IMG/VR virus record: IMGVR_UViG_3300047510_001118
Span: 1 to 64,000 of that record
Reading direction: 5' to 3' (one strand)
DNA: 64,000 nucleotides
Below are positions 915-52,999 of this stretch, in pieces. The notes beneath the pieces were generated by a model, which had not been told where the DNA came from, ran no database searches, and was given only the letters and a program-made list of their open reading frames with translations. Every line of letters starts with the position of its first letter. The stretch's first letter is position 1. The translations under genes and the position numbers were made by a program.

Positions 915-943
915 ATTATACATTGACTGTATTTTGTTGTCAA
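915..943 (-). promoter_or_regulatory. sigma70 promoter TTGACA-17-TATAAT
   Basis: Perfect consensus on minus strand. Confidence 0.85.
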
Positions 944-959
944 TACGTTTTGGTGATAT

Positions 960-1051
960 TGGTACCCCCGGCGGGAGTCGAACCCACATTGGCCAATTAT
1001 CTGTTGCTCACGGGATATAAATCCGCTGTTTTACCATTAAACTACAGGGGC
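960..1051 (-). tRNA. tRNA-Ile(TAT), with 22-nt variable region
   Basis: Cloverleaf, T-loop TTCGACT, encoded CCA, anticodon loop TTTATAT. Confidence 0.75.
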
Positions 1052-1062
1052 ATATAAAAGAA

Positions 1063-1172
1063 GCTCGGCTGGCGCTTGAATCCGCGGTAACCCTTCTCTT
1101 CCTGGCACCTCTCTACGTCGTCATGATATCTAGTAGAGTTCAGTGTTGTTCCAGTGTAGTTACTGACCGAGC
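1063..1172 (-). ncRNA. ~110-nt structured RNA between tRNAs
   Basis: Nested stems GCTCGG/CCGAGC, GTAAC/GTTAC, CTGG/CCAG, CTCTAC/GTAGAG. Confidence 0.55.
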
Positions 1173-1177
1173 AAACT

Positions 1178-1251
1178 TGGAGCGGGATACGAGAATCGAA
1201 CTCGTAACTAGAGCTTGGAAGGCTTTCGTTTTACCATTAAACTAATCCCGC
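1178..1251 (-). tRNA. tRNA-Gly(TCC)
   Basis: Cloverleaf, CCA, anticodon TCC. Confidence 0.95.
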
Positions 1252-1256
1252 ATAAA

Positions 1257-1331
1257 TGGTACACCGTAGGAGAATCGAACTCCTCTTACCTGCGTGAAAG
1301 GCGGGTGTCCTAACCGATAGACGAACGGTGC
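1257..1331 (-). tRNA. tRNA-Glu(TTC)
   Basis: Cloverleaf, CCA, anticodon TTC. Confidence 0.95.
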
Positions 1332-1335
1332 TTTG

Positions 1336-2121
1336 TTAAAGATATTTCTGTATTCTTTCTGCTATATTAGCCTGTAATTCTAATTTCATAGTGCCGTTTT
1401 CAGCACCATTGGAATGATATTGTTTAAAAAAATCTATACAATCAATACCACGTCCCATGATACGATCAAAAACTTCGATGTTTTCTTTTTCGTCGTCTCC
1501 GAATCGAACCACAGTCCATTTCAATTTATAATGATTTAATACTTTTACTAACTGTGTATAACTTTTAGAATGTTTTCTAATATACCATTCTCTTGTCTGC
1601 GACAATTGAAAAGCCATACGTTTTACTAATTCTTTGTGTACTTCTATAGGATAATCGTCTGGATTATATTCTACATCGCCATAATTGGGACTTTTTTCAA
1701 ACACATATCTTTTCCCATTATGTTTAAATGAACTTACAATATGCGGAAATGTAAAGTCTGTTACTAGCACATGATCTGGCTGTCCGTGCTTTTCTAAATA
1801 TTGTAAAAGTCTTTTATGGTAACCAACAAAATGGGCACCATTCAAACTACGATTAACTACTGTTCCGGGCAACAAGTTTGGCCAACTAGAATTAAGTTCT
1901 TGTTGTCTTAGATATGCCCAAACAGCAGATTCTATATTTTTTGTCGGCATTGGCTCTTCAACTTTATTTTCAATCTTATGTTTTAGATACCATTTGAACG
2001 CCTGAGGAAAATTTTTATGAAACCGAAGACTCCAAGTTCTAGGAGCAGTTTCATCTAAAATTTGATCTGCTAAACAGTTGTTTCCGTTACTTTGACAATC
2101 GCCTAATACTAATATTTTCAT
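1336..2121 (-). CDS. hypothetical protein, SGNH/GDSL-like N-terminus
   Basis: 261 aa, 'KILVLGDCQS' resembles the GDS block; AT-rich insertion in the tRNA array. Confidence 0.6.
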   Translation of the reverse strand: MKILVLGDCQSNGNNCLADQILDETAPRTWSLRFHKNFPQAFKWYLKHKIENKVEEPMPTKNIESAVWAYLRQQELNSSWPNLLPGTVVNRSLNGAHFVGYHKRLLQYLEKHGQPDHVLVTDFTFPHIVSSFKHNGKRYVFEKSPNYGDVEYNPDDYPIEVHKELVKRMAFQLSQTREWYIRKHSKSYTQLVKVLNHYKLKWTVVRFGDDEKENIEVFDRIMGRGIDCIDFFKQYHSNGAENGTMKLELQANIAERIQKYL

Positions 2122-2129
2122 AATTTATA

Positions 2130-2204
2130 TGGTGGAGGATGGGAGGATCGAACTCCCAACTCATGCTTGCAAAGCACATGTGTTCCCATTAGCACCAATC
2201 CCCC
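2130..2204 (-). tRNA. tRNA-Ala(TGC)
   Basis: G3:U70 pair, anticodon TGC, CCA. Confidence 0.95.
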
Positions 2205-2206
2205 AT

Positions 2207-2392
2207 TTAATCTTTATCAGGACAATCTGGATCTATATCCTGATCGTAATACTCGTTCTTCATTATTGCTTCATCAAACTGTTCGTTATCTGACTTTTTC
2301 TTTTTACTAAAGATAGTATCCCAGTTGTTGTCAAAGGTTTTTTGATCAACACTAAATGGTCTTGGTTTACTACCCTTTCCACCGTCTGACAT
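2207..2392 (-). CDS. small conserved phage protein (MSDGGKGSKPRP...)
   Basis: Strong AAGGAG SD; fills the gap between tRNAs. Confidence 0.75.
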   Translation of the reverse strand: MSDGGKGSKPRPFSVDQKTFDNNWDTIFSKKKKSDNEQFDEAIMKNEYYDQDIDPDCPDKD

Positions 2393-2408
2393 AACATCTC
2401 CTTAAAAT

Positions 2409-2485
2409 TGGCTGGCCTACCTGGGCTCGAACCAGGGACCCTTTGATTAACAGTCAAATGCTACTACCAACTGAGCTATAGGCCA
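2409..2485 (-). tRNA. tRNA-Asn(GTT)
   Basis: Cloverleaf, anticodon GTT. Confidence 0.95.
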
Positions 2486-2493
2486 ATAAAACT

Positions 2494-2568
2494 TGGTACC
2501 TGGTGACAGTTTCGAACTGCCGACCCTCTCGGTGTAAACGAGACGCTCTACCCCTGAGCTAACCAGGC
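2494..2568 (-). tRNA. tRNA-Val(TAC)
   Basis: Cloverleaf, anticodon TAC. Confidence 0.95.
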
Positions 2569-2578
2569 AAACTAACAT

Positions 2579-2656
2579 TGGTCGGAGTACAAGGATTCGA
2601 ACCTTGGACCCCCTGGTCCCAAACCAGGTGCGCTAGCCAGACTGCGCCACACTCCG
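2579..2656 (-). tRNA. tRNA-Pro(TGG)
   Basis: Cloverleaf, anticodon TGG. Confidence 0.95.
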
Positions 2657-2657
2657 A

Positions 2658-2810
2658 TTAACTTGGTATTACATGCGGTATATACGGAACTGCTCTTGGA
2701 CCACCATAGAGTTGTTCAAAAAGTTTTTTAGCCTCTTGCGGTGTCGCCGCATAGATTCTTTTCTTTTCTTCACCACTTGGTGTTCTTACAGTTGTTTCAT
2801 ACATTGGCAT
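2658..2810 (-). CDS. small hypothetical protein (MPMYETTVRTP..., 50 aa)
   Basis: AGGAG SD just after the tRNA-Gly CCA; start corrected from the ORF track. Confidence 0.7.
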   Translation of the reverse strand: MPMYETTVRTPSGEEKKRIYAATPQEAKKLFEQLYGGPRAVPYIPHVIPS

Positions 2811-2822
2811 ATAATAACTCCT

Positions 2823-2898
2823 TGGAGCGGGATAAGAGGCTCGAACTCTCGACCTATACCTTGGCAAGGTATCGCTCTACCAACTGAGCTAATCCCGC
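2823..2898 (-). tRNA. tRNA-Gly(GCC)
   Basis: Cloverleaf, anticodon GCC. Confidence 0.95.
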
Positions 2899-2906
2899 AT
2901 AAATTT

Positions 2907-2941
2907 TGGTGCCCCAAGAGAGACTCGAACTCTCACAGAGC
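2907..2941 (-). pseudogene. isolated 3' half of a tRNA (T-arm, acceptor 3' strand, CCA)
   Basis: GAGAG-TTCGAGT-CTCTC-TTGGGGC-ACCA with no upstream arms. Confidence 0.8.
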
Positions 2942-2945
2942 AAAT

Positions 2946-3022
2946 TGGTGCCTCAGGAGGGACTCGAACCCTCAAAATTTGGCTTCTAAGACCAACACGT
3001 ATACCAATTCCGTCACCGAGGC
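2946..3022 (-). tRNA. tRNA-Leu(TAG), short variable loop
   Basis: Leu-type D-loop GGAATTGGTATAC, anticodon TAG, A73. Confidence 0.9.
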
Positions 3023-3456
3023 GTCTTTCTTTCTTCCCACTTGGCTTTGATTGCTTCTGCTATCTTTGCTTTGTGTTCCGGAGACTTAGTTTTACCTAAG
3101 TTTCCTTTTCCTGCCTTACTTGCTGTTTTACGAGCTTGTAACGCACGAGCTTTTTCTAAACCGTGTTTTTCAACAGTTCTTTCCCAAATAGTTTTGCCAC
3201 TGTTTTCAACTTGATCTTGCCTATTCTCTTGTGCCGTCCCCCAATACAGATGATTAGGATTACCGCACTTAGCATTATGACAAGCATGACATAAATGAAC
3301 TTTATGTCCTGTTGGAACAGTTGTATCTAATAAATGTGCTAACAGTCCTTTGAAATAGTAACTGCCAGCACCTCGTTCAACACAGGCTTCATCTAACTTG
3401 AGATGGTTCTGTCTTTCTGCCTTAGGTAGTAAAATGTATTCTTCTATTAGTTTCAT
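3013..3456 (-). CDS. HNH homing endonuclease with NUMOD3-like C-terminus
   Basis: HLCHACHNAKCGNPNHLYWGTAQEN motif; GKTKSPEHKAKIAEA; start taken at MKLIEEY. Confidence 0.8.
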   Translation of the reverse strand: MKLIEEYILLPKAERQNHLKLDEACVERGAGSYYFKGLLAHLLDTTVPTGHKVHLCHACHNAKCGNPNHLYWGTAQENRQDQVENSGKTIWERTVEKHGLEKARALQARKTASKAGKGNLGKTKSPEHKAKIAEAIKAKWEERKTPR

Positions 3457-3484
3457 ACATTTATTTATGCTAAACACGACAAAA

Positions 3485-3511
3485 GCGTGTCTACCATTCC
3501 ACCACCAGGGC
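3485..3511 (-). pseudogene. isolated 5' half of a tRNA-Leu-like gene
   Basis: GCCCTGG-TGGTGGAATGGTAGACACGC, then abrupt loss of tRNA similarity. Confidence 0.75.
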
Positions 3512-3518
3512 AAAAAAT

Positions 3519-3593
3519 TGGTGCCGGATGTCGGGATCGAACTGACGACCTACCGCTTACAAGGCGGTTGCTCTACCACTGAGCTAATCCGGC
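3519..3593 (-). tRNA. tRNA-Thr(TGT)
   Basis: Cloverleaf, anticodon TGT. Confidence 0.95.
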
Positions 3594-3617
3594 GTGATTC
3601 TATTTATGAAAACTATT

Positions 3618-3692
3618 TGGCGGTCTCAACGAGAATCGAACTCGTCCCTACGGCGTGACAGGCCATTATACTAACCGATATACTATGAGACC
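3618..3692 (-). tRNA. tRNA-Asp(GTC)
   Basis: Cloverleaf, anticodon GTC. Confidence 0.95.
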
Positions 3693-3768
3693 ATATAGAA
3701 GCACACAGACTAACTACCAGAAACACTTATAGTGTCATTACTCGGTTCGAGCCAATGTGCTTTTATAT
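3693..3768 (-). ncRNA. inter-tRNA structured RNA A (shared closing stem)
   Basis: ATATAAAAGCACA...TGTGCTTCTATAT terminal stem. Confidence 0.5.
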
Positions 3769-3857
3769 GGTGGAGCCTGAAGGAATTGAACCTAACTGCC
3801 AGCCACCCAACAATATTATGGCAACGGATTTACAGTCCGCCGTTGGGAACAGGCTCC
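3768..3857 (-). tRNA. atypical tRNA-Tyr(GTA)
   Basis: Anticodon arm GCGGA-CTGTAAA-TCCGT, 8-bp acceptor, no D-stem, long V-arm. Confidence 0.7.
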
Positions 3858-3872
3858 AAACTTACGCGAAAT

Positions 3873-3884
3873 TTTTAAAGAACA
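3873..3884 (-). promoter_or_regulatory. boxA-like antitermination element TGTTCTTTAAAA
   Basis: Matches rrn boxA consensus TGCTCTTTAACA; lies downstream of the internal promoter. Confidence 0.6.
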
Positions 3885-3890
3885 AACAGT

Positions 3891-3983
3891 TGGTGGAAGG
3901 TGTGGGATTCGAACCCACGCACCGCATTTTGTACGGTGGACGGTTTAGCAAACCGCTGCCTTCGGCCACTCAGCCAACCTTCC
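3891..3983 (-). tRNA. tRNA-Ser(GCT)
   Basis: Long V-arm, anticodon GCT. Confidence 0.95.
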
Positions 3984-3995
3984 TAACTTGTGTCT

Positions 3996-4024
3996 ATTAT
4001 ACGACAAGTTTTTTAACTTGTCAA
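3996..4024 (-). promoter_or_regulatory. internal sigma70 promoter TTGACA-17-TATAAT with palindromic spacer
   Basis: TTGACAAGTTAAAAAACTTGTCGTATAAT. Confidence 0.85.
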
Positions 4025-4032
4025 CTACTTTA

Positions 4033-4122
4033 TGGCGGAAGCGGTGAGATTCGAACTCACGGACCATTTCTGATCGTCTGTTTTCAAGACAGGTGCAATA
4101 AACCGGACTCTGCCACACTTCC
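4033..4122 (-). tRNA. tRNA-Ser(TGA)
   Basis: Long V-arm, anticodon TGA, G73. Confidence 0.95.
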
Positions 4123-4130
4123 ATAAATTT

Positions 4131-4211
4131 TGGTGCCCCTAATCGGATTCGAACCGATAGTTATGACACTCCTTTTGAGAGAGCCGCCTTTACCAATTTG
4201 GCCATAGGGGC
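4131..4211 (-). tRNA. tRNA-Leu(CAA)
   Basis: Anticodon loop CTCAAAA; reduced V-arm. Confidence 0.9.
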
Positions 4212-4216
4212 AATAC

Positions 4217-4288
4217 TGGCGCCTCTGGAGAGATTCGAACTCCCATAACCTGGTTTAGAAGACCTGGCACTGCTCCATCAGCAGAGGC
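4217..4288 (-). tRNA. tRNA-Arg(TCT), compact D-arm
   Basis: Anticodon loop CTTCTAA; 72 nt. Confidence 0.8.
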
Positions 4289-4291
4289 TAC

Positions 4292-4375
4292 TGGTGCGAG
4301 AGACGGGACTCGAACCCGTATGCCTTTCGACGGCAGATTTTAAGTCTGCTGCGTATACCATTCCGCCACTCTCGC
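4292..4375 (-). tRNA. tRNA-Leu(TAA)
   Basis: Cloverleaf, anticodon TAA. Confidence 0.95.
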
Positions 4376-4379
4376 ATAC

Positions 4380-4455
4380 TGGTGCCGCTCCTTGGGATCG
4401 AACCAAGTTCCTCGGTGCTTCAAACCGGTGCAATGACCACATTTGCTAAAGCGGC
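4380..4455 (-). tRNA. tRNA-Phe(GAA)
   Basis: Anticodon loop TTGAAGC. Confidence 0.9.
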
Positions 4456-4504
4456 AAAAGAAAAACTCTACACACTAACTATGTTAACCGAGTAGAGCCA
4501 TAAT

Positions 4505-4579
4505 TGGGGTGAAGCCGGGAATCGAACCCTGCCTTACTGTTTCACAGACAGCCGTGCGTACCACTACACTAGCAACACC
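4505..4579 (-). tRNA. tRNA-His(GTG)
   Basis: G-1:C73, anticodon GTG. Confidence 0.92.
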
Positions 4580-4585
4580 ATTGTT

Positions 4586-4659
4586 TGGTATCGCGTACGG
4601 GGATCGAACCCGCCTGACTAGGTTGAAAGCCTAGTGACCTCCCAGAAGTCCAACGCGAT
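4586..4659 (-). tRNA. tRNA-Glu(TTC), second copy, divergent
   Basis: Anticodon loop CTTTCAA. Confidence 0.88.
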
Positions 4660-4665
4660 GTTGTT

Positions 4666-4743
4666 TGGCACCCCTGGAAGGACTTGAACCTTCGACTCCT
4701 ACCTTCGCAAGGTAGTACTCTGATTCCGCTGAGTTACAGGGGT
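4666..4743 (-). tRNA. tRNA-Arg(GCG)
   Basis: CTACC-TTGCGAA-GGTAG anticodon arm. Confidence 0.85.
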
Positions 4744-4905
4744 ATTAATACGTTCTAAAGCATCACGTCGCATTTTAAACGGACGATGCTCATCGGGACG
4801 ATGTACAATCAAATATTCCACACCGTCAATGTTTTCGGTCACACGGGTATCGTCACAGACAAATCGCTCATTATTAAAACGATTTTTAAACATAGTTTGT
4901 TTCAT
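4699..4905 (-). CDS. small hypothetical protein; 3' end overlaps tRNA-Arg(GCG)
   Basis: AAGGAG SD; 68 aa. Confidence 0.65.
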   Translation of the reverse strand: MKQTMFKNRFNNERFVCDDTRVTENIDGVEYLIVHRPDEHRPFKMRRDALERINTPVTQRNQSTTLRR

Positions 4906-4927
4906 GACAATCTCCTTAAAGTTGTTT

Positions 4928-5002
4928 TGGCCGGCCTGGAGAGATTCGAACTCCCGACTGCTGGTTTCGAAGACCAGAACTCTTCCACTGAGCTACAGGC
5001 CG
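4928..5002 (-). tRNA. tRNA-Arg(TCG)
   Basis: Anticodon loop CTTCGAA. Confidence 0.92.
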
Positions 5003-5010
5003 ATAATGTT

Positions 5011-5084
5011 TGGCACGGGTGCTAGGGCTCGAACCTAGAATAACAGAGTCAAAGTCTGTGGTGTTACCATTACACTACACCCGA
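5011..5084 (-). tRNA. tRNA-Gln(TTG)
   Basis: Anticodon TTG, G73. Confidence 0.93.
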
Positions 5085-5091
5085 TCAGAAC

Positions 5092-5166
5092 TGGTGGTAA
5101 TGGAAAGAGTCGAACTTTCACAGCGCACCGTATGAAGGTGTTGCACTACCATTATGCTACATTACC
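5092..5166 (-). tRNA. tRNA-CAT (elongator Met or Ile2)
   Basis: Anticodon CAT; lacks initiator C1:A72 mismatch and 3 G-C pairs. Confidence 0.85.
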
Positions 5167-5319
5167 ATATAGAAACATACTAATGAACCAGCCTGACGCA
5201 GCCGTACGCTTGGCAGATCGTTTCCAATCTGTTTCTCGCTTTTCTCGGTACTCTGTATGTTCAGGATTCCGCAGTCCTCAATACAATCGCTTGTAAGGGC
5301 AACTAATATGTTTTTATAT
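5167..5319 (-). ncRNA. inter-tRNA structured RNA B (shared closing stem)
   Basis: ATATAAAAACATA...TATGTTTCTATAT terminal stem, internal hairpins. Confidence 0.55.
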
Positions 5320-5392
5320 GGTAGGGGCACAGAGAATCGAACTCTGATTAATAGGTTAAAAGCCTACTACTTTGCCGTTAAGTTATACCCCC
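5319..5392 (-). tRNA. tRNA-Lys(TTT)
   Basis: Anticodon TTT. Confidence 0.93.
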
Positions 5393-5518
5393 ACGATCTT
5401 ACCACTCTTGTCACTTTCCATAACAGGATCTCCTATTTTAAATTTTTGTCGATAAAATATATCAATACTACAAGCATGAGTAAAACGGCCACCGCCCCAT
5501 TTTAGTTCCCCTTATAGT

Positions 5519-5593
5519 TGGTGCCTAATCTTGGGAACGATCCAAGGACCTATGCGTTATCAACACATTGCTCTACCACTGAGCTAATTAGGC
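5519..5593 (-). tRNA. tRNA-Ile(GAT)
   Basis: Anticodon GAT; variant T-loop ATCGTTC. Confidence 0.9.
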
Positions 5594-5799
5594 AAAATGA
5601 ATTTGTAAGTAGTTGCCCCATCGTTATAGCAACCATTCACCCGTGTAATTAAGCCGGCCGGGACTCGGTACGTCACTTGGAATACTTAACCAACGTGTCT
5701 ATTTTTTGCTAGGGTTTTGCGCCCCCCGTTGCCTTACTATAGTCAGCTCTTCGAAGAAGCCTGCTATAGTGTCTTTCTCTTGCTGACACTTACAAAACT

Positions 5800-5877
5800 T
5801 GGAGTGAGGAGTCGGATTTGAACCGACGGCTTTACAGTTTTGCAGACTGTTGCATTGGGCCTCTCTGCCATCCTCAC
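5800..5877 (-). tRNA. tRNA-Cys(GCA)
   Basis: Anticodon GCA, U73. Confidence 0.93.
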
Positions 5878-5883
5878 ATTACT

Positions 5884-5960
5884 TGGCGACCCGGGAAGGA
5901 TTTGAACCTCCGACATTTGGTTTTGGAGACCAACGTTCTGCCAGACTGAACTACCGAGCC
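5884..5960 (-). tRNA. tRNA-Trp(CCA)
   Basis: Anticodon CCA, G73. Confidence 0.93.
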
Positions 5961-6232
5961 ATAAATTATAACACACTCACGATCGGGAATCCCTAATCCA
6001 TAAACAAACTATGTCTGTTTATAAAGAATGTGTGTATTAAAACATTCTAACAACGCAGGCTATGCCTTACTACGCTATGAGTGTAGCCGTCCCTATAGAA
6101 TGCTTTAATACGCTACCGTTTTACACATCTAGGTTATCGCCCTAGACTTACCATCAGGTAGGCCGCCCACATTATAGTCTTGTTTAAAGTGTAGACAGGG
6201 TCGCGTTCCCTATACCACTTTACTGCTGAACC

Positions 6233-6415
6233 TTAACGATCAGTGTGCCAAAGAAGACTGCTCTTCTTTAATGCTTCTCTGAGTGTACGGGCTCTGTCAA
6301 ACTTATCTTGAATAAGTTTGCGTGTCTGTTCATCGCTTAATGTATAAGCAGACACGTAAGCCTGTTCAACAATCTTCTTGTTTAATTTTGTGTAATCTAT
6401 GTCTTTTGTTTCCAT
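6233..6415 (-). CDS. hypothetical protein, first gene after the attenuator
   Basis: AAGGAG SD, 60 aa. Confidence 0.7.
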   Translation of the reverse strand: METKDIDYTKLNKKIVEQAYVSAYTLSDEQTRKLIQDKFDRARTLREALKKSSLLWHTDR

Positions 6416-6774: not shown

Positions 6775-6803
6775 ATTATATGAGTATTTATATATCTTGT
6801 CAA
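6775..6803 (-). promoter_or_regulatory. sigma70 promoter TTGACA-17-TATAAT containing T4-type late promoter TATAAATA
   Basis: TTGACAAGATATATAAATACTCATATAAT. Confidence 0.75.
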
Positions 6804-17269: not shown

Positions 17270-17371
17270 AAAAGTTCCTAAAATAAAAAGGGCTGTATTT
17301 CTTCAGCCCTAACTATGCATATTAACGCATTAGTAAACAAAACGTAAGTCTTTTTGGTGAAACTGATAAAA

Positions 17372-17395
17372 GAAAAGGCTCCGAAGAGCCTTTTC
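17372..17395 (-). terminator. terminator after tmRNA
   Basis: gaaaaggctc-cgaa-gagccttttc. Confidence 0.8.
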
Positions 17396-17752
17396 ACTAT
17401 TTTGGGTTACAAGGTATAGTTACCCCGGAGCTGCAGTTTCTTAGGCTGCTAGTTCAAAACGCTTGCCTGTTACAGCGAAGTCAGTTTTGAAATACTCAAA
17501 TGTAGATGCGTTTGCATTTACTAGTTTTGCTTGATTAACGGTCATCGCCTACCGTGTTGCCTCTTTCGCTATCTCGCCATGTCGAAACCGGTCGGGCCCA
17601 TCATAAAAGGACTAGAGCAAATACTACGAGTACAACTACTACACCTATTCCTAGATGAGTTAGATCATCGTTCATACTAATCTCCTTATGGTGGACCCGG
17701 GGGGAATCGAACCCCCGTCCACAACGCCTTCACTACGAAGGAATTACAACAA
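17396..17752 (-). ncRNA. ssrA: two-piece (circularly permuted) tmRNA
   Basis: Acceptor piece ends GGTTCGATTCCCCCCGGGTCCACCA (17689). Coding piece starts GGGCCCGACCGGTTTCGAC (17599). G3:U70. Tag ANASTFEYFKTDFAVTGKRFELAA* at 17441-17515. Confidence 0.9.
17601..17675 (-). CDS. 24-aa hydrophobic peptide inside the tmRNA intervening segment
   Basis: AAGGAG SD + MNDDLTHLGIGVVVVLVVFALVLL*. Confidence 0.5.
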   Translation of the reverse strand: MNDDLTHLGIGVVVVLVVFALVLL

Positions 17753-17756
17753 TACC

Positions 17757-17960
17757 TTAGGCTGGCTGAATATTGCTAGCCTGTTGACCTTTCATGCCCA
17801 TAGTTACTTCAAACCTTACACTCTGTCCTTCTTGTAGGCTTTTGAAGCCACTTGACTGAATCTGTGAAAAGTGAGCAAATAAGTCTGCGCCACCATCGTC
17901 CGGTGTAATGAACCCAAAACCTTTGGCGTCGTTAAACCATTTTACTTTTCCTGTTACCAT
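17757..17960 (-). CDS. cspA: cold-shock protein
   Basis: [20 protein letters not shown] motifs. Confidence 0.95.
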
Positions 17961-38223: not shown

Positions 38224-40104
38224 TCAATTCTTTTTGGCTTCAGTAAACTCAGCATCAACAACATCGTTATCAGAGGACGATGTTGTAGCCTCAGCAGTTT
38301 TTGCGGCTAAAATTGGTTGTATAGCCACTGCTAGGTCGCTGGTCTTTTGAACGATGATATCTTTGTCGTCACCCTTGACTGCTTCTAAAACAGCATCACA
38401 GGCTTCTTCAATTTTACCTTTTTGTTCTTCAGTAAGTTTATCTTTTACTTCATCCAAATCTTTTTTAACTGTATGTACCTGTGCTTCAGCAGAATTTCTA
38501 GCGTCAATCAACTCTCGTTGTTTACGATCACTTTCAGCATTGGCTTCTGCTTCTTGAACCATGCGTTCAATTTCTTCCTTACTTAGGCCGCTGTCGCTCT
38601 TGATAGTGATTTGATTTTCTTTGCCGGTGTTTTTATCTTTAGCACTGATTTTCATAATGCCGTTGGCATCAATATCAAATGTAACTTCAATCTGTGGCTG
38701 ACCACGACGTGCTGGAGCAATGCCATCTAACTTAAACTCGCCGAGTAGTTTATTGTATTGGAACAGTTCTCGTTCACCTTGACCAACTTTAATATCCACT
38801 GCTGGCTGATTATCTTCTGCTGTACTAAACACTTGACTAGCCTTGGTAGGGATAGTTGTATTCTTTTGTACAAGTTTAGTAAACACACCGCCCATAGTTT
38901 CAATGCCTAGACTCAATGGTGTTACGTCTAACAATAAAACGTCTGTGCGATCGCCTGCTAGTACACTACCTTGAATAGCCGCACCAACTGCTACTGCTTC
39001 GTCTGGATTAACATCACGACGTGGAGCCTTGCCAAACAGACGTTCAACTTCTTCTTGTACCTTAGGCATACGTGTCTGACCACCGACTAAGATAACTTCG
39101 TCGATGTCAGCGGCTGTTACACCCGCATCTTTCATAGCAATGCGGCAAGGCGCCAATGAACGGTTAATCAAATCTTCAACTAGTGCTTCTAGTTTACTTC
39201 TTGTAATTTTAACAATAAGGTGTTTTGGACCACTGGCATCTGCTGTAATGTATGGTAGGTTGACCTCAGTCTGTGAACTATTTGAAAGTTCAATCTTGGC
39301 TTTTTCTGCGGCATCTTTTAATCTTTGTAGAGCCAGTGTATCAGATTTTAAATCTATACCTTGTTCTTTCTTAAACTCATCAACTAAGAAATCCATGATG
39401 CGTTGATCAAAGTCTTCACCACCTAGGAATGTATCGCCGTTTGTTGACAATACTTCAATTTGTTTATCGCCGTCGACATCAGCAATCTCGATAATAGATA
39501 CGTCAAACGTACCACCACCTAAATCGTATACAGCAATCTTTCGATCCTTTTTATCAGTTTTATCAACACCGTAGGCTAGTGCGGCTGCTGTTGGTTCGTT
39601 GATAATACGCAAGACTTCTAAGCCAGCAATCTGTCCAGCATCTTTGGTAGCCTGGCGTTGTGCGTCATTAAAATATGCTGGTACTGTGATAACTGCTTGA
39701 GTTACTTCGTGACCTAAATAGTCTTCAGCAGTCTTTTTCATCTTGCGAAGAACTTCTGCTGAAATCTGTGGAGGTGCTAGTTCTTTGTCTTGAGCCTTAA
39801 CCCAAGCATCACCGTTTTTTGCTTCGATGATACTGTAAGGTATAAGATCAATTTCTTTTTGTACAGCCTGCTCTTTAAATTTACGACCAATTAGTCGTTT
39901 AGACGCATAGATTGTATTTTTTGGGTTTGTAACCGCTTGACGCTTTGCTGATGCGCCAACTAGAATTTCATCTGAAGTATAGGCGACGATACTGGGTGTA
40001 GTACGGGCACCTTCAGAGTTTTCAATTACTTTGGAATTTCCTGCCTCGATGATAGCCACGCATGAGTTGGTGGTTCCGAGGTCAATACCGATGACTTTGC
40101 TCAT
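38224..40104 (-). CDS. dnaK: chaperone DnaK
   Basis: [18 protein letters not shown]; start corrected. Confidence 0.97.
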
Positions 40105-40185
40105 ATTGTTATCTCCTTTAATTAAGCAAGATTTAAGTTTGGGCAACTGCCCGTTTATAGGACCCGAAGCATCCTACAATTTTAT

Positions 40186-49977: not shown

Positions 49978-50634
49978 TTAATATTTTCCCGACGCAAGTA
50001 CTATCTTGCAAATGTGTTCTAATCTTTCTATGTGTTCATACGCTCGCCACGGACTAGTATCAATGGCTACAACACCGTGTCCTTTGATACCCACAATGTC
50101 GTAGGCAATATTTCCATTTCGATCTAACTTCAGATTCTTATGACACTGATCTGCTAGTTCTTGGCTAATAGGAGGTACATCTCCTACATTAGGAGCAACC
50201 TTTGTGTAACGATTGAGTTCTGGAAACGAACTACTAATAGTACTAAGATCAATTCCAGCATGCATGGCCGCAATACAGTAGGTAGGATGAACGTGTACCA
50301 CTACTCTAACTTCGCCACTGTGCTGACCCATTTCTTTTTGTAAGCCAAAGTGTAAAGGAATCTCGCCGCTAGGCTTTAGTTTAGCACTAATATCAGTGTA
50401 CTCTATATCTTCCCAGACATAGTTAAATGCTGCACTACCGACGCCACTGTTAATACTTCGCCAAATCTTAATCTTCTTAAACTGATCGGGTTGTAGTGTT
50501 TGCTTACGTACACCGCTGGGTGTAATGTAGAAATGATCGCGGTCGTGGTGACGAATACTCACATTGCCATCGCGACTAGTAATCCAGTTACGCTTATAAG
50601 CGTCTTCTAATACTTCACAGATAGTTTCTAACAT
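49978..50634 (-). CDS. class II aldolase/adducin family protein
   Basis: GNVS, TPSG, PS.E..LH, H.HP, GHG. Confidence 0.88.
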   Translation of the reverse strand: MLETICEVLEDAYKRNWITSRDGNVSIRHHDRDHFYITPSGVRKQTLQPDQFKKIKIWRSINSGVGSAAFNYVWEDIEYTDISAKLKPSGEIPLHFGLQKEMGQHSGEVRVVVHVHPTYCIAAMHAGIDLSTISSSFPELNRYTKVAPNVGDVPPISQELADQCHKNLKLDRNGNIAYDIVGIKGHGVVAIDTSPWRAYEHIERLEHICKIVLASGKY

Positions 50635-52961
50635 TATAGTTTACATGCCTCACAATCTTCAGACTCGTCAACACTTACTTCTACATAGTTCTTTGCCACA
50701 GTAGTAATTAGTTGTTCTTCTTTGGCACCAGCCTTGTTAATTAGGCTATAGTAAAATGTTTTAATTCCCCACATATGAGCCTGCATTAAATTTTTAGCAA
50801 TCAATGTTGTTGGTACTTTACGATCCGCAAAGTGTGCTGGATTGTAAAAAGTATTTGTTGAAATACTTTGATCCACATAGGCCTGTAGCACTGCCGCAGT
50901 TTTTAGATAACCAACACAGTCTTGTTGATCCCACATCATTTGATATTTGTTTTTTAACTTATGATAATCTGGAACAACCTGTGTGAATGAACCTGCCTTA
51001 GACTCTTTAGTAGAGATAAGGCTCATTGGCATTTCTATTCCATTAGTACTATTAATAACAACACTACTAGACTCAACTGGAGCAATAGCCATAAGAGTAG
51101 CATTTCGTACACCATGTTCTAACATCTCCCCACGTAATGTTTCCCAGTCTAACTCTGGAGTAAAGTCTGCCAGTTCATTAACACCCTTGGCACGGTTTTC
51201 CCAAGGAAACTCGCCTTGTCCGTAACGTGTGTGTTCACTGTGGAGACATGGACCACGTTCCTTGGCTAGTTCAACTGTGGCTTCTGTTAGATAATAGGCT
51301 TGATGCTCCATCCATGTCTTGACATCTTGTAGAGCGTCTTTCTCACCATACTTGAGTCCACGCTTGGCGTGCCAATAGGCTAGGTTAGTAACTCCAATGC
51401 CCAATGGCTGTATTTCATCGTTACTAAGTTTACTCTGTATACTTAAGAAGTCTTGATAATCAAGAATATTACATAGAGAACGCTGAAGTATGCGGCAAGC
51501 ACGACGCATATCTTCTGGATTGCGGAAAGCCCCCCAGTTGATACTACCAAGTGTACACAAAGCAATGCGGCCACTATCGTCATCGAGACGCTTAAAAGGT
51601 CGAGTAGGTAATAGAATTTCACAGCAAAGGTTACTCTGGTAAATTGTATGATATTCAGGATCAAAAGGTCCTTGATTCATAACATTGTCGACAAACACTA
51701 GATAGATACGTCCAGTGTCTGTACGCTCTTTTAGTATTCCTGATTTAAATACTTCCTCGGCACTCATTGTTTTTTTGCGCAGGTCTTTACGCTTTTCGTA
51801 TTTGACATAGAGTTCTTCAAATAATTCTGTGTCTTTATAAAACGCTTCATATAAATCTGGAACTTCGTTAGGATCAAAGAATGTTATGTCTTCTTTGTTT
51901 TTGAATCGTCTCCAGAAGAAAGCACTAAGCACAACCCCATAATCCATATGACGGACTCGGGTTTCTTCGGTTCCTTGGTTGTTTTTAAGTACAATAAGAT
52001 CATCAAACTGATGATGCCAAATAGGATAGAATACAGTAGCACTAGCATTACGAATACCTCCTTGCGAGCATGAGCGCAAATCTCCGAACCATTTTTTCAG
52101 GAATGGTATCATACCTGTGTGCATAATTTCACCGCCACGGATCGGGGAGCCCAATGGGCGAAGTCGACCGATTTCCAATCCAATCCCCGCTCTCTTACTG
52201 GCATATTTGGCCATCATCTCCCCACTAGCAAATATGCTATCCAGATCGTCGTCACTGCGGATAAGAACACAACTAGAAAACTGCTTAGTAGGAGTGCCGA
52301 GCCCAGCCAGCACAGGAGTAGCAAGAGTAAACAAACCATCTGAAGCACAGTTGTAGTACTCTTTGATGTAACGCATACGGGCCGTGTTAGGTTCTTCTTT
52401 ATGAAAGACCGTAGCCGCGGCCACCATATATCTAACTTGGGGAGTTTCATAAATTTCCTTTGTCGCACGATTGCGTACCAAATATTTTTCAATTAACTGC
52501 TCAATGCTGGCATAACCATATTGCTCGTCTTTAGAATGATCCAGCATATCATCCATCTTGTTCCAGTCGTCCTCACTGTACCACTGTAATAGTTCAGGAG
52601 TGTATAGACCAACTTCTACATTTTTCTTTACAATGGTGTAGAGGCGGGGAGGCTCGTATTGGCCATAAACGTCTTTACGCAACATGCTGAGACGTTGCTT
52701 GCCTGCCACATATTGATAATTAGTGTGTCCTACATCTGGATTGTGTTCTACATCGATAAGATTGACAATAGCACGTAAAGTTATTTCGTCAATCTCTTTA
52801 GTTGTTATGCCGTCATAAAAATGAGGCTGTGCTTTGATTTCAATCATACTCTGACTGACGTCTGCTATTCCGCTACAAACCTTTGCTACTTGGGCTTGCC
52901 ACTTCTCTATGTGTAATGTCTCTCTCTGTCCACTTCTTTTTATTACTGTTATATTTGTCAT
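50634..52961 (-). CDS. nrdA: ribonucleotide reductase class Ia alpha subunit
   Basis: ATP cone, QFSSC, SNLCCEI, KTFYY, C-terminal CEAC. Confidence 0.96.
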   Translation of the reverse strand: MTNITVIKRSGQRETLHIEKWQAQVAKVCSGIADVSQSMIEIKAQPHFYDGITTKEIDEITLRAIVNLIDVEHNPDVGHTNYQYVAGKQRLSMLRKDVYGQYEPPRLYTIVKKNVEVGLYTPELLQWYSEDDWNKMDDMLDHSKDEQYGYASIEQLIEKYLVRNRATKEIYETPQVRYMVAAATVFHKEEPNTARMRYIKEYYNCASDGLFTLATPVLAGLGTPTKQFSSCVLIRSDDDLDSIFASGEMMAKYASKRAGIGLEIGRLRPLGSPIRGGEIMHTGMIPFLKKWFGDLRSCSQGGIRNASATVFYPIWHHQFDDLIVLKNNQGTEETRVRHMDYGVVLSAFFWRRFKNKEDITFFDPNEVPDLYEAFYKDTELFEELYVKYEKRKDLRKKTMSAEEVFKSGILKERTDTGRIYLVFVDNVMNQGPFDPEYHTIYQSNLCCEILLPTRPFKRLDDDSGRIALCTLGSINWGAFRNPEDMRRACRILQRSLCNILDYQDFLSIQSKLSNDEIQPLGIGVTNLAYWHAKRGLKYGEKDALQDVKTWMEHQAYYLTEATVELAKERGPCLHSEHTRYGQGEFPWENRAKGVNELADFTPELDWETLRGEMLEHGVRNATLMAIAPVESSSVVINSTNGIEMPMSLISTKESKAGSFTQVVPDYHKLKNKYQMMWDQQDCVGYLKTAAVLQAYVDQSISTNTFYNPAHFADRKVPTTLIAKNLMQAHMWGIKTFYYSLINKAGAKEEQLITTVAKNYVEVSVDESEDCEACKL

Positions 52962-52999
52962 TGTTGCCTCAACTTGCAAAGTATGATATTTAGTACCAC

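What the first reader, a model, noticed from the sequence alone, without database searches (positions are those of the whole stretch)
3693..6111. Family of inter-tRNA RNAs sharing one closing stem but different cargo
Four elements (3693-3768, 5167-5319, 5968-6037, 6034-6111) share a terminal helix with consensus TATWAAARCAYWYT...WGWRTGYTTYWATA but enclose unrelated internal hairpins. The first two have the same A.C mismatch position and exactly fill the gap between one tRNA's CCA and the next tRNA's 5' end, so tRNA processing would release them as discrete RNAs. Inference: a modular sRNA/decoy cassette system (protein sponges or antitoxin mimics), or a common processing signal.
Basis: partly seen in the sequence, partly recalled or inferred. 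Interest (0 to 1): 0.65.

Follow-up and report, generated by a model that had tools for sequence, protein, structure and literature searches.

The report
Stalked small RNAs in phage tRNA arrays
Between the tRNA genes of this large freshwater phage lie small RNAs enclosed by one shared, roughly 20-base-pair stem that begins at the preceding tRNA's CCA end, and the same stem encloses about a hundred different inserts in at least 170 other uncultured phage contigs, which makes it an undescribed, widespread RNA cassette of unknown role.

Summary
The window is the start of a 278-kb freshwater jumbo-phage record, with about 28 tRNA genes on the minus strand. E1 (3693-3768) and E2 (5167-5318) are clear members of one family. 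E4 (6034-6111) is a diverged member. E3 (5968-6037) is at best a degenerate relative.

The shared stem starts at the discriminator and CCA of the upstream tRNA and ends at position -1 of the next tRNA. The same stem sequence occurs in more than 120 IMG/VR contigs with short inserts (row-capped) and 58 with long inserts. It always lies on the tRNA strand, and 94 of 130 copies start exactly after a CCA. It encloses 80 insert classes among 108 short inserts and 17 classes among 46 long ones.

It was essentially absent from cellular genomes, from five cultured jumbo phages, from T4 and from Rfam.

Other stems of unrelated sequence have the same architecture, with a constant length of about 20-21 bp and G.U far more common than A.C. 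This points to selection on an RNA helix.

Best reading: a processing and stability stalk that releases varied small RNAs from tRNA transcripts, probably through RNase III plus RNase P. Cargo function is unknown. The stalks strongly prefer tRNA-Lys(UUU), Glu(UUC) and Gln(UUG).

The parts
3693..3767 (-). E1: stalked inter-tRNA RNA. The 5' arm is 3754-3767, the cargo is about 3708-3753 and the 3' arm is 3694-3707. U at 3693 pairs with A76 at 3768.
   Evidence: Model R1 gives 52.8 bits over 3690-3771, though E1 was in the training set. Fold z = -3.4. Pattern hit.
3768..3857 (-). tRNA-Tyr(GUA)-like gene whose ACCA (3768-3771) forms the base of the E1 helix. It lacks a normal D arm and has a long variable arm.
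   Evidence: Rfam tRNA-Sec hit of 29.3 bits, below threshold. The fold shows acceptor, anticodon (loop with GUA) and T arms. ARAGORN did not call it.
3618..3692 (-). tRNA-Asp(GUC). Its 5' end abuts the E1 3' arm.
   Evidence: ARAGORN and Rfam.
5167..5318 (-). E2: stalked inter-tRNA RNA with a 123-nt cargo. The 5' arm is 5305-5318 and the 3' arm is 5168-5181. U at 5167 pairs with A76 at 5319.
   Evidence: 17 of 18 positions pair, counting ACCA. R1 gives 15.3 bits, penalised for the long insertion. Pattern hit. RNA-library contigs of relatives keep both arms but carry a different interior.
5319..5392 (-). tRNA-Lys(UUU) upstream of E2. This is the commonest upstream partner of the family.
   Evidence: In foreign loci, 59 of 84 tRNA-Lys(UUU) genes are followed by such a helix.
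5092..5166 (-). tRNA-Met(CAU) downstream of E2. This is the commonest downstream partner.
   Evidence: It accounts for 22 of 36 adjacent downstream tRNAs in foreign loci.
6034..6111 (-). E4: diverged member with a 15-16 bp stem of related sequence. It is not preceded by a tRNA and lies in the leader of the array transcript.
   Evidence: R1 gives 21.5 bits, E = 2e-4. Fold z = -4.9.
5968..6037 (-). E3: a hairpin with two inner stem-loops. Only the inner half of its arms resembles the family. Its 3' arm carries an extended -10-like motif 4-5 nt before tRNA-Trp.
   Evidence: Fold z = -3.8. No R1 hit.
6775..6803 (-). Perfect sigma-70-type promoter upstream of the array. A second one lies at 3996-4024.
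   Evidence: 12 of 12 consensus matches.
1052..1177 (-). Inter-tRNA RNA between tRNA-Gly and tRNA-Ile. It is homologous to a cargo class that sits inside the consensus stalk in other phages, but here it is closed by a different stem.
   Evidence: BLAST and alignment.
5594..5799 (-). Conserved 206-nt structured inter-tRNA RNA between tRNA-Cys and tRNA-Ile. It has its own 9-bp closing stem and is not of the CCA-helix type.
   Evidence: Homologs in at least 22 foreign loci. 17 covarying pairs. No Rfam match.

Best explanation
E1, E2 and (diverged) E4 belong to a phage-specific family of 'stalked' RNAs embedded in tRNA arrays.

Proposed pathway:
1. The element is co-transcribed with the tRNAs from sigma-70-type promoters (inferred).
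2. Its two ends form a helix of about 20 bp. The first pairs of that helix use the discriminator and CCA of the upstream tRNA, and its last nucleotide is position -1 of the next tRNA (shown by sequence and covariation).
3. RNase P cuts at the 3' boundary. A double-strand-specific nuclease, most likely host RNase III, cuts inside the two-turn helix (both inferred).
4. This leaves the upstream tRNA with a short AU-rich trailer that exonucleases trim back to CCA. The cargo is released as a small RNA capped by a residual stem that protects it from exonucleases (inferred).

The stalk is therefore a generic processing and stability platform, and the cargo is the variable payload. The payloads are many unrelated small RNAs, some of them tRNA-like, whose targets are unknown.
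For: Specificity:
- In IMG/VR, 130 copies lie on the tRNA strand and none only on the opposite strand. 94 start at the base after a CCA, 116 are preceded by CCA and 117 are followed by TGG.
- The same pattern in cellular genomes gave 204 hits, of which 1 has those flanks, and that one sits on a tRNA-rich 1.5-kb contig.
- In five viral genomes the model hits cluster in one region of each record. In this record that region is the tRNA array.

RNA helix:
- Positions outside the search pattern are conserved up to a sharp edge. Pairing runs from the discriminator to position +14, and +14 is 80% paired with no sequence conservation.
- 92.5% of cells pair, against 30-62% when the partner is slid. 38 cells change on both sides, a count reached by 0 of 500 shuffles.
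- Of 1620 CCA-ending tRNAs, 154 have a complement of at least 16 of 18, against 5 in a parallel-pairing control.
- 24-27 of these stems have unrelated sequences. They show G.U 28 against A.C 7 on the sense strand (p = 5e-4). Their helices end abruptly at 20-21 bp.

Modularity: many cargo classes share one stalk, and one cargo occurs with two different stalks.

No universal phage partner: RNase III, TROVE and DUF2828 are absent from five records, two of them complete. This favours a host enzyme.

Promoters.
Against: - No RNA ends were observed. The RNA-library data are contigs of relatives and cannot show cleavage.
- Structure-specific RNase III does not explain why the main stalk sequence is nearly invariant while the adjacent tRNA-Lys genes are only 67% identical on average. 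It also does not explain the conserved A.C mismatch.
- When a tRNA follows directly, the UGG of the stalk is also nucleotides 1-2 of that tRNA, so part of the helix competes with that tRNA's acceptor stem.
- Short cargos are only weakly structured (mean z = -0.44), so some may be filler.
- The host is unknown.
Confidence: 0.5

Rival explanations
1. The helix is mainly a device acting on the upstream tRNA. It sequesters the ACCA end of particular tRNAs to delay, order or protect their maturation, for example against host enzymes that attack tRNA 3' ends, or as a reserve of precursor. On this view the cargo is largely spacer.
For: - The helix always starts at the discriminator and CCA.
- 96 of 240 tRNA-Lys(UUU), Glu(UUC) and Gln(UUG) genes are followed by such a helix, against 22 of 1380 other tRNAs. 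The Glu cases mostly use stems unrelated to the pattern used for sampling.
- Short cargos are hypervariable and weakly structured.
Against: - Several cargo classes are conserved across phages with compensatory changes.
- One cargo class keeps its sequence under two different stalks.
- E4 and other copies are not preceded by a tRNA.
- The enrichment is partly inherited gene order (Lys-element-Met), so the copies are not independent events.
Confidence: 0.2
2. The conserved stalk is a sequence-specific protein handle. It would be a Y-RNA-like particle with a Ro-like protein, or the recognition site of a dedicated phage endonuclease, and the cargo would be a module presented to that protein.
For: - The arm sequence is near-invariant and the A.C mismatch is conserved in 88 of 114 copies, while the neighbouring tRNA-Lys genes are far less conserved. 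The arm figures are inflated because copies were sampled by a pattern that fixes most arm positions.
- A DUF2828+DUF7788 protein (PHROG 'RNA-binding protein') lies in 8 of 120 neighbourhoods.
- A YkuK-like RNase H-fold protein (PF04308) lies in 26 of 120 neighbourhoods, next to the arrays.
Against: - Neither protein is in this genome.
- TROVE and DUF2828 are absent from five records, two of them complete. PF04308 is present in only 2 of the 5.
- Stems of unrelated sequence share the same geometry.
- No YrlA or Y_RNA hit on the elements.
Confidence: 0.15
3. The arms act in DNA, as terminal inverted repeats of a miniature mobile element or as a recombination site that shuffles cassettes within tRNA arrays.
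For: - The arms resemble inverted repeats, and the interior differs at the same Lys-Met position in different phages.
- Homing-type HNH endonuclease genes are frequent in the arrays. One lies at 3013-3513 in this window.
Against: - Orientation relative to the tRNAs is constant: 0 of 130 copies lie only on the opposite strand.
- G.U exceeds A.C on the sense strand, which a DNA cruciform would not show.
- There is no direct target duplication.
- The boundary falls exactly at the RNA-defined CCA end.
- There are no copies outside the tRNA arrays.
- Interiors are not copies of each other, unlike those of miniature transposons.
Confidence: 0.05
4. The stem similarity is a chance resemblance among AT-rich spacers.
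For: The arms are AT-rich. E3 resembles the family only loosely.
Against: - 4 matches against 0.07 expected in the window.
- More than 170 foreign contigs carry the same arms in the same context.
- The cellular-genome control is negative.
Confidence: 0.01

Closest known systems
Phage T4 stable RNAs C and D (species 1 and 2 RNA, rnaC/rnaD)
   Same: They are small non-tRNA RNAs encoded inside a phage tRNA cluster on the tRNA strand and abutting tRNA genes, and their function is still unknown (PMC3014915). rnaC carries a T-arm-like hairpin, as some cargos here do. From memory and unverified here: T4 species 1 RNA was an early in vitro RNase III substrate.
   Different: There is no sequence or model similarity: R1 finds nothing in the T4 tRNA region. 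T4 has two fixed RNAs, with no shared stalk, no interchangeable cargo and no helix that includes the upstream CCA.
tRNA-operon spacer RNAs of E. coli (such as the 3' external spacer of glyW-cysT-leuZ, which acts as an sRNA sponge). Recalled from the literature, not checked here.
   Same: They are functional RNAs released as by-products of tRNA transcript processing.
   Different: Those are single-stranded trailers of a cellular operon, with no conserved closing helix and no cassette-like diversity.
RNase III processing stalks (rRNA operon stems; the hairpin downstream of tRNA metY in metY-nusA). Established knowledge, not checked here.
   Same: Sequences flanking a functional RNA pair into a helix of about two turns, and cleavage of that helix releases the enclosed or neighbouring RNA. 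The helix length here is 19-22 bp.
   Different: Cleavage was not shown here. Here the helix starts inside the tRNA 3' end and encloses small, highly diverse RNAs.
Bacterial and phage Y RNAs (YrlA) with Ro60/Rsr
   Same: They are 80-130 nt RNAs in which the 5' and 3' ends form a long stem and the interior is modular and sometimes tRNA-like. Some are encoded in phages (PMC4201824; PMC7824862).
   Different: The elements give no YrlA model hit. By reading the sequence, E1 has no GNCGAA(N)G motif; E2 and E4 were not checked for it. No Ro or TROVE gene is present in this genome or in four relatives.

Membership tests
Any Rfam 15 family | A covariance-model hit on the element | tested here: not met
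   No family hits E1-E4 at E up to 10. None hits three long cargo classes at E up to 1.
Y RNA / YrlA | YrlA model score at or above gathering (69 bits) | tested here: not met
   No hit on the elements. The weak 22-25 bit hits in relatives lie elsewhere or across pairs of tRNAs.
Y RNA / YrlA | A Ro60/TROVE gene within about 4 kb on the same strand (criterion of PMC4201824) | tested here: not met
   TROVE and DUF2828 are absent from G000 and four related records. A DUF2828 protein is present in only 8 of 120 neighbourhoods.
Y RNA / YrlA | A GNCGAA(N)G motif near the 5' end | tested here: inconclusive
   Reading the E1 sequence shows no such motif. E2 and E4 were not checked. Some foreign cargos begin with UUCGAA, which is not the motif.
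T4 rnaC/rnaD | Sequence or structure homology to the T4 RNAs | tested here: not met
   R1 finds nothing above noise in the T4 tRNA region. The folds differ.
RNase III substrate | Uninterrupted double-stranded helix of about two turns (about 20-22 bp) | tested here: met
   The helix is 19-21 bp in the main family and 20-24 bp in unrelated-sequence stems, and it ends abruptly.
RNase III substrate | Staggered cleavage by RNase III in vivo or in vitro | not testable with these tools
   Only contigs of RNA libraries were available, and they show no ends.
RNase P substrate boundary | The element ends exactly at position -1 of a tRNA | tested here: met
   This holds for E1 and E2 in the window. A tRNA follows at distance 1 in 36 of 130 foreign copies.
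Miniature inverted-repeat transposable element | Direct target-site duplication, copies with homologous interiors, both orientations, dispersed sites | tested here: not met
   The flanks are inverted (CCA and TGG), not direct. There are 80 interior classes among 108 short copies. No copy lies only on the opposite strand. Copies occur only in tRNA arrays.
Stalked inter-tRNA RNA family defined here (model R1) | Helix from discriminator+CCA with consensus arms, same strand as the tRNAs, unrelated interior | tested here: met
   E4 scores 21.5 bits and E2 15.3 bits with a long insertion. E1 scores 52.8 bits but was in the training set. E3 is not met.

The most novel reading that the evidence does not exclude
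The stalks form a counter-defence platform. They are attached preferentially to the three tRNAs whose wobble uridine makes them the classical targets of anticodon nucleases (Lys-UUU, Glu-UUC, Gln-UUG). They hold the ACCA end of these tRNAs in a duplex and display fast-evolving cargo RNAs that act as decoys or inhibitors of host immune RNA-binding effectors. This would amount to an RNA cassette system for the phage-host arms race.
Probability: 0.15. Interest if true: 0.9.

Novelty: new variant of a known kind. Interest (0 to 1): 0.75.

Why it matters
Phage tRNA arrays are usually read as lists of tRNAs. Here a sizeable share of the array encodes other RNAs built on one reusable scaffold, with about a hundred different payloads across uncultured freshwater phages.

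- If the stalk is a processing and stability module, it is a natural design for expressing arbitrary small RNAs from tRNA transcripts, and a handle for finding many new phage RNAs by search.
- The strong link to tRNA-Lys, Glu and Gln suggests a tie to tRNA-targeting host defences, which is directly testable.
- The family is not in Rfam. Model R1 found nothing in the five cultured jumbo phages searched or in the T4 tRNA region. A short blastn query over the cultured-phage collection found no copy either, though that search is weak. The family has therefore gone unannotated.

Tried and rejected
- **Rfam:** searched at gathering and at permissive thresholds; only tRNAs and a tmRNA were found.
- **blastn of the region and of one element against cultured phages:** only tRNA matches or noise. 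The low-complexity filter may hide the AT-rich arms.
- **Promoter reading of the TATAAAA part of the 5' arm:** rejected, because variants in that part are compensated in the other arm.
- **Antisense targets of the E1, E2 and E4 cargos in the phage's own genome:** only chance-level 11-13-mers.
- **Homologs of the E1, E2, E4 and E3 interiors:** none in 120 foreign loci; for the E2 cargo also none in the 58 long-cargo loci.
- **The 474-aa ORF next to the array as a Ro-like protein:** rejected; it is a repeat-rich structural protein.
- **A phage-encoded partner:** RNase III, TROVE and DUF2828 are absent, and PF04308 is not universal.
- **RNA-library contigs:** they come from relatives and cannot show transcript ends or strand.
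- **Literature:** no description of the element was found. The recalled RNase III cleavage of T4 species 1 RNA could not be verified in the held library.
Full report
**Context.** The window is the first 64 kb of a 278-kb IMG/VR virus record, estimated 75% complete. The DNA is held in freshwater, lake and river metagenome runs.
- Positions 960-5960 carry 27 ARAGORN tRNA genes on the minus strand. One more tRNA-Tyr(GUA)-like gene lies at 3768-3857; ARAGORN misses it.
- Perfect sigma-70-type promoters on the minus strand lie at 6803-6775, 4024-3996 and 943-915.
- The record also encodes a permuted tmRNA, a DnaK and a ribonucleotide reductase.

**Checking the observation.** All elements are read on the minus strand.
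- E1 follows the CCA of the tRNA-Tyr-like gene and ends one base before tRNA-Asp. E2 follows tRNA-Lys(UUU) and ends one base before tRNA-Met.
- Their arms are nearly identical and differ by compensated changes. Both have an A.C mismatch at the same place.
- E4 has a related 15-16 bp stem. E3 shares only the inner half of the arms.
- Fold z-scores are -3.4 (E1), -2.0 (E2), -3.8 (E3) and -4.9 (E4). No Rfam family matches any of them.

- Of 130 copies on the tRNA strand, none lay only on the opposite strand. 94 began at the base after an annotated tRNA CCA: 60 after Lys-UUU, 15 after Gln-UUG and 5 after Glu-UUC. 116 were preceded by CCA and 117 were followed by TGG.
- Positions not fixed by the pattern are also conserved. 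These are the discriminator A, the CCA, three more arm positions on each side, and TGGT downstream. Information falls to zero at a sharp boundary with the cargo.
- A second scan for 95-125 nt interiors with the CCA and TGG flanks found 58 more contigs.
- As a control, the same pattern in 185,579 species genomes gave 204 hits, of which one had the CCA/TGG flanks. That one lies on a 1.5-kb contig with nine tRNAs, probably a misbinned phage fragment.
- Covariance model R1 finds 1-4 copies in each of five large viral records, clustered in one region of each; in this record that region is the tRNA array.
- R1 finds nothing in five cultured jumbo phages with large tRNA sets or in the T4 tRNA region.
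- None of 49 CCA-ending tRNAs sampled in those cultured phages is followed by a CCA-including helix.

**It is an RNA helix.**
- Pairing runs from the discriminator base through position +14. Position +14 is 80% paired with every pair type and no sequence conservation. Beyond it pairing declines to the chance level.
- On 61 sequences, 92.5% of cells pair, against 30-62% for slid partners. 38 cells change on both sides, reached by 0 of 500 shuffles.
- Independently of the consensus, 154 of 1620 CCA-ending tRNAs in the fetched loci are followed within 220 nt by a complement of at least 16 of 18 to ACCA plus 14 nt. A parallel-pairing control gives 5.
- 24-27 of these stems have quite different sequences, mostly after tRNA-Glu. 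In them G.U outnumbers A.C by 28 to 7 on the tRNA strand (p = 5e-4). This asymmetry is expected for a transcribed helix and not for a DNA cruciform.
- Their helices stop abruptly after 20-21 bp whatever the sequence. The main family measures 19-21 bp.

**Cargo.**
- The 108 distinct short interiors fall into 80 classes. The 46 long ones fall into 17 classes.
- Short cargos are only slightly more structured than shuffles (mean z = -0.44, p = 1.5e-5) and are 49% GC, against AT-rich arms.
- Several classes are conserved between phages with compensatory changes. Seven of 46 long cargos contain T-loop-like hairpins.
- One long class is homologous to the window's own inter-tRNA RNA at 1052-1177, which is closed by a different stem. 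So cargo and stalk combine independently.
- The E1, E2 and E4 cargos have no homolog in the loci searched and no significant complementarity elsewhere in the genome.

**Diversity of the carriers.**
- The tRNA-Lys genes next to the elements are on average only 67% identical, while the arms are about 94% identical. The arm figure is inflated because copies were sampled by pattern.
- Complete carrier genomes range from 172 to 364 kb.

**Partners.**
- Neighbourhood clustering found a YkuK-like RNase H-fold protein (PF04308) in 26 of 120 loci and a DUF2828+DUF7788 'RNA-binding protein' in 8. It also found phosphoesterases, HNH endonucleases, a dCMP deaminase and Hsp20.
- None of these is universal. 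PF04308 is in 2 of 5 large records. DUF2828, TROVE and RNase III are in none, and two of those records are complete.
- A host enzyme is therefore the simplest partner.

**Mechanism.**
- Shown: the architecture, the RNA-level constraint, the fixed two-turn length, the exact tRNA boundaries and the modularity.
- Inferred: RNase P defines the 3' boundary. A double-strand-specific nuclease, most likely RNase III, cuts the helix. Exonucleases trim the tRNA trailer. The cargo survives as a stem-capped RNA.
- The near-invariance of the main stalk sequence and its A.C mismatch remain unexplained by this model. They keep a sequence-specific factor in play.

**An unexplained association.** 96 of 240 tRNA-Lys(UUU), Glu(UUC) and Gln(UUG) genes are followed by such a helix, against 22 of 1380 other tRNAs.
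- Part of this is conserved gene order and sampling bias toward the Lys-linked consensus. The Glu-linked stems, however, have other sequences.
- From general knowledge, these are the tRNAs attacked by several anticodon nucleases. That is a lead, not a finding.

**RNA evidence.** Four river metatranscriptome runs hold contigs of relatives. These span tRNA-arm junctions and show both E2 arms with a different interior. Contigs cannot show ends, strand or expression, so processing is untested.

**Comparison and novelty.** The closest analogues are T4 RNAs C and D, which are small RNAs of unknown role in a phage tRNA cluster. Others are spacer-derived RNAs of cellular tRNA operons, RNase III processing stalks, and Y RNAs. 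The elements fail the membership tests for Rfam families, YrlA, the T4 RNAs and miniature transposons. I rate this a new variant of a known kind: non-tRNA RNAs matured from tRNA transcripts. The new features are a shared stalk that incorporates the tRNA 3' end and a very large interchangeable cargo repertoire.

Noticed in passing
window 17350-17792 (-): A phage-encoded, circularly permuted (two-piece) tmRNA of the betaproteobacterial type. Rfam scores are 132 and 126 bits, and ARAGORN gives a tag peptide. It hints at a betaproteobacterial host.
   Followed up: no
window 5594-5799 (-): A 206-nt structured RNA between tRNA-Cys and tRNA-Ile. It is conserved at 70-93% identity in at least 22 foreign phage loci and has 17 covarying pairs. 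Relatives carry a T-arm-like hairpin. There is no Rfam match and the function is unknown.
   Followed up: partly
window 1052-1177 (-): A 126-nt inter-tRNA RNA homologous to a cargo class that sits inside the consensus stalk after tRNA-Lys in other phages. Here it has a different closing stem and a remnant of the consensus 3' arm.
   Followed up: partly
window 3768-3857 (-): A tRNA-Tyr(GUA)-like gene without a normal D arm and with a long variable arm. ARAGORN missed it and it is sub-threshold in Rfam.
   Followed up: partly
window 2899-2945 (-): This spacer looks like the 3' half of a tRNA (T arm, acceptor strand, CCA), that is, a tRNA remnant.
   Followed up: no
window 3013-3513 (-): A 166-aa His-Me finger/HNH homing-type endonuclease ORF inside the tRNA array. 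HNH genes are also common in the arrays of relatives.
   Followed up: partly
window 6775-6803, 3996-4024, 915-943 (-): Three perfect 12/12 sigma-70 consensus promoters drive the array. This suggests transcription by unmodified host RNA polymerase.
   Followed up: no
window 6112-6299 (-): The leader upstream of E4 has homologs in two foreign loci (L062, L080) and predicted structure.
   Followed up: no
window 38224-40146 (-) and 50634-52979 (-): A phage-encoded DnaK (65-68% identical to gammaproteobacterial DnaK found in phage-collection records) and a ribonucleotide reductase large subunit.
   Followed up: no
L071:3658-5088 (+); L049:10795-11280 (-): Proteins found in the neighbourhoods of the elements in relatives. 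One is a 477-aa DUF2828+DUF7788 protein (PHROG 'RNA-binding protein', possibly Ro-like) in 8 of 120 loci. The other is a 162-aa YkuK-like RNase H-fold protein (PF04308) in 26 of 120 loci. In G003 and G004 the PF04308 gene lies within about 1-3 kb of the elements. Both are candidate RNA-processing partners, and both are absent from this genome.
   Followed up: partly
foreign loci L005-L124: 40% of tRNA-Lys(UUU), Glu(UUC) and Gln(UUG) genes are followed by a CCA-including 20-bp helix, against 1.6% of other tRNAs. tRNA-Glu is usually followed by longer elements (125-240 nt) with quite different stem sequences.
   Followed up: partly
L281:2166-2281 (-): A weak YrlA (Y RNA-like) hit of 25 bits, below threshold, in an inter-tRNA gap of a related phage.
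   Followed up: no
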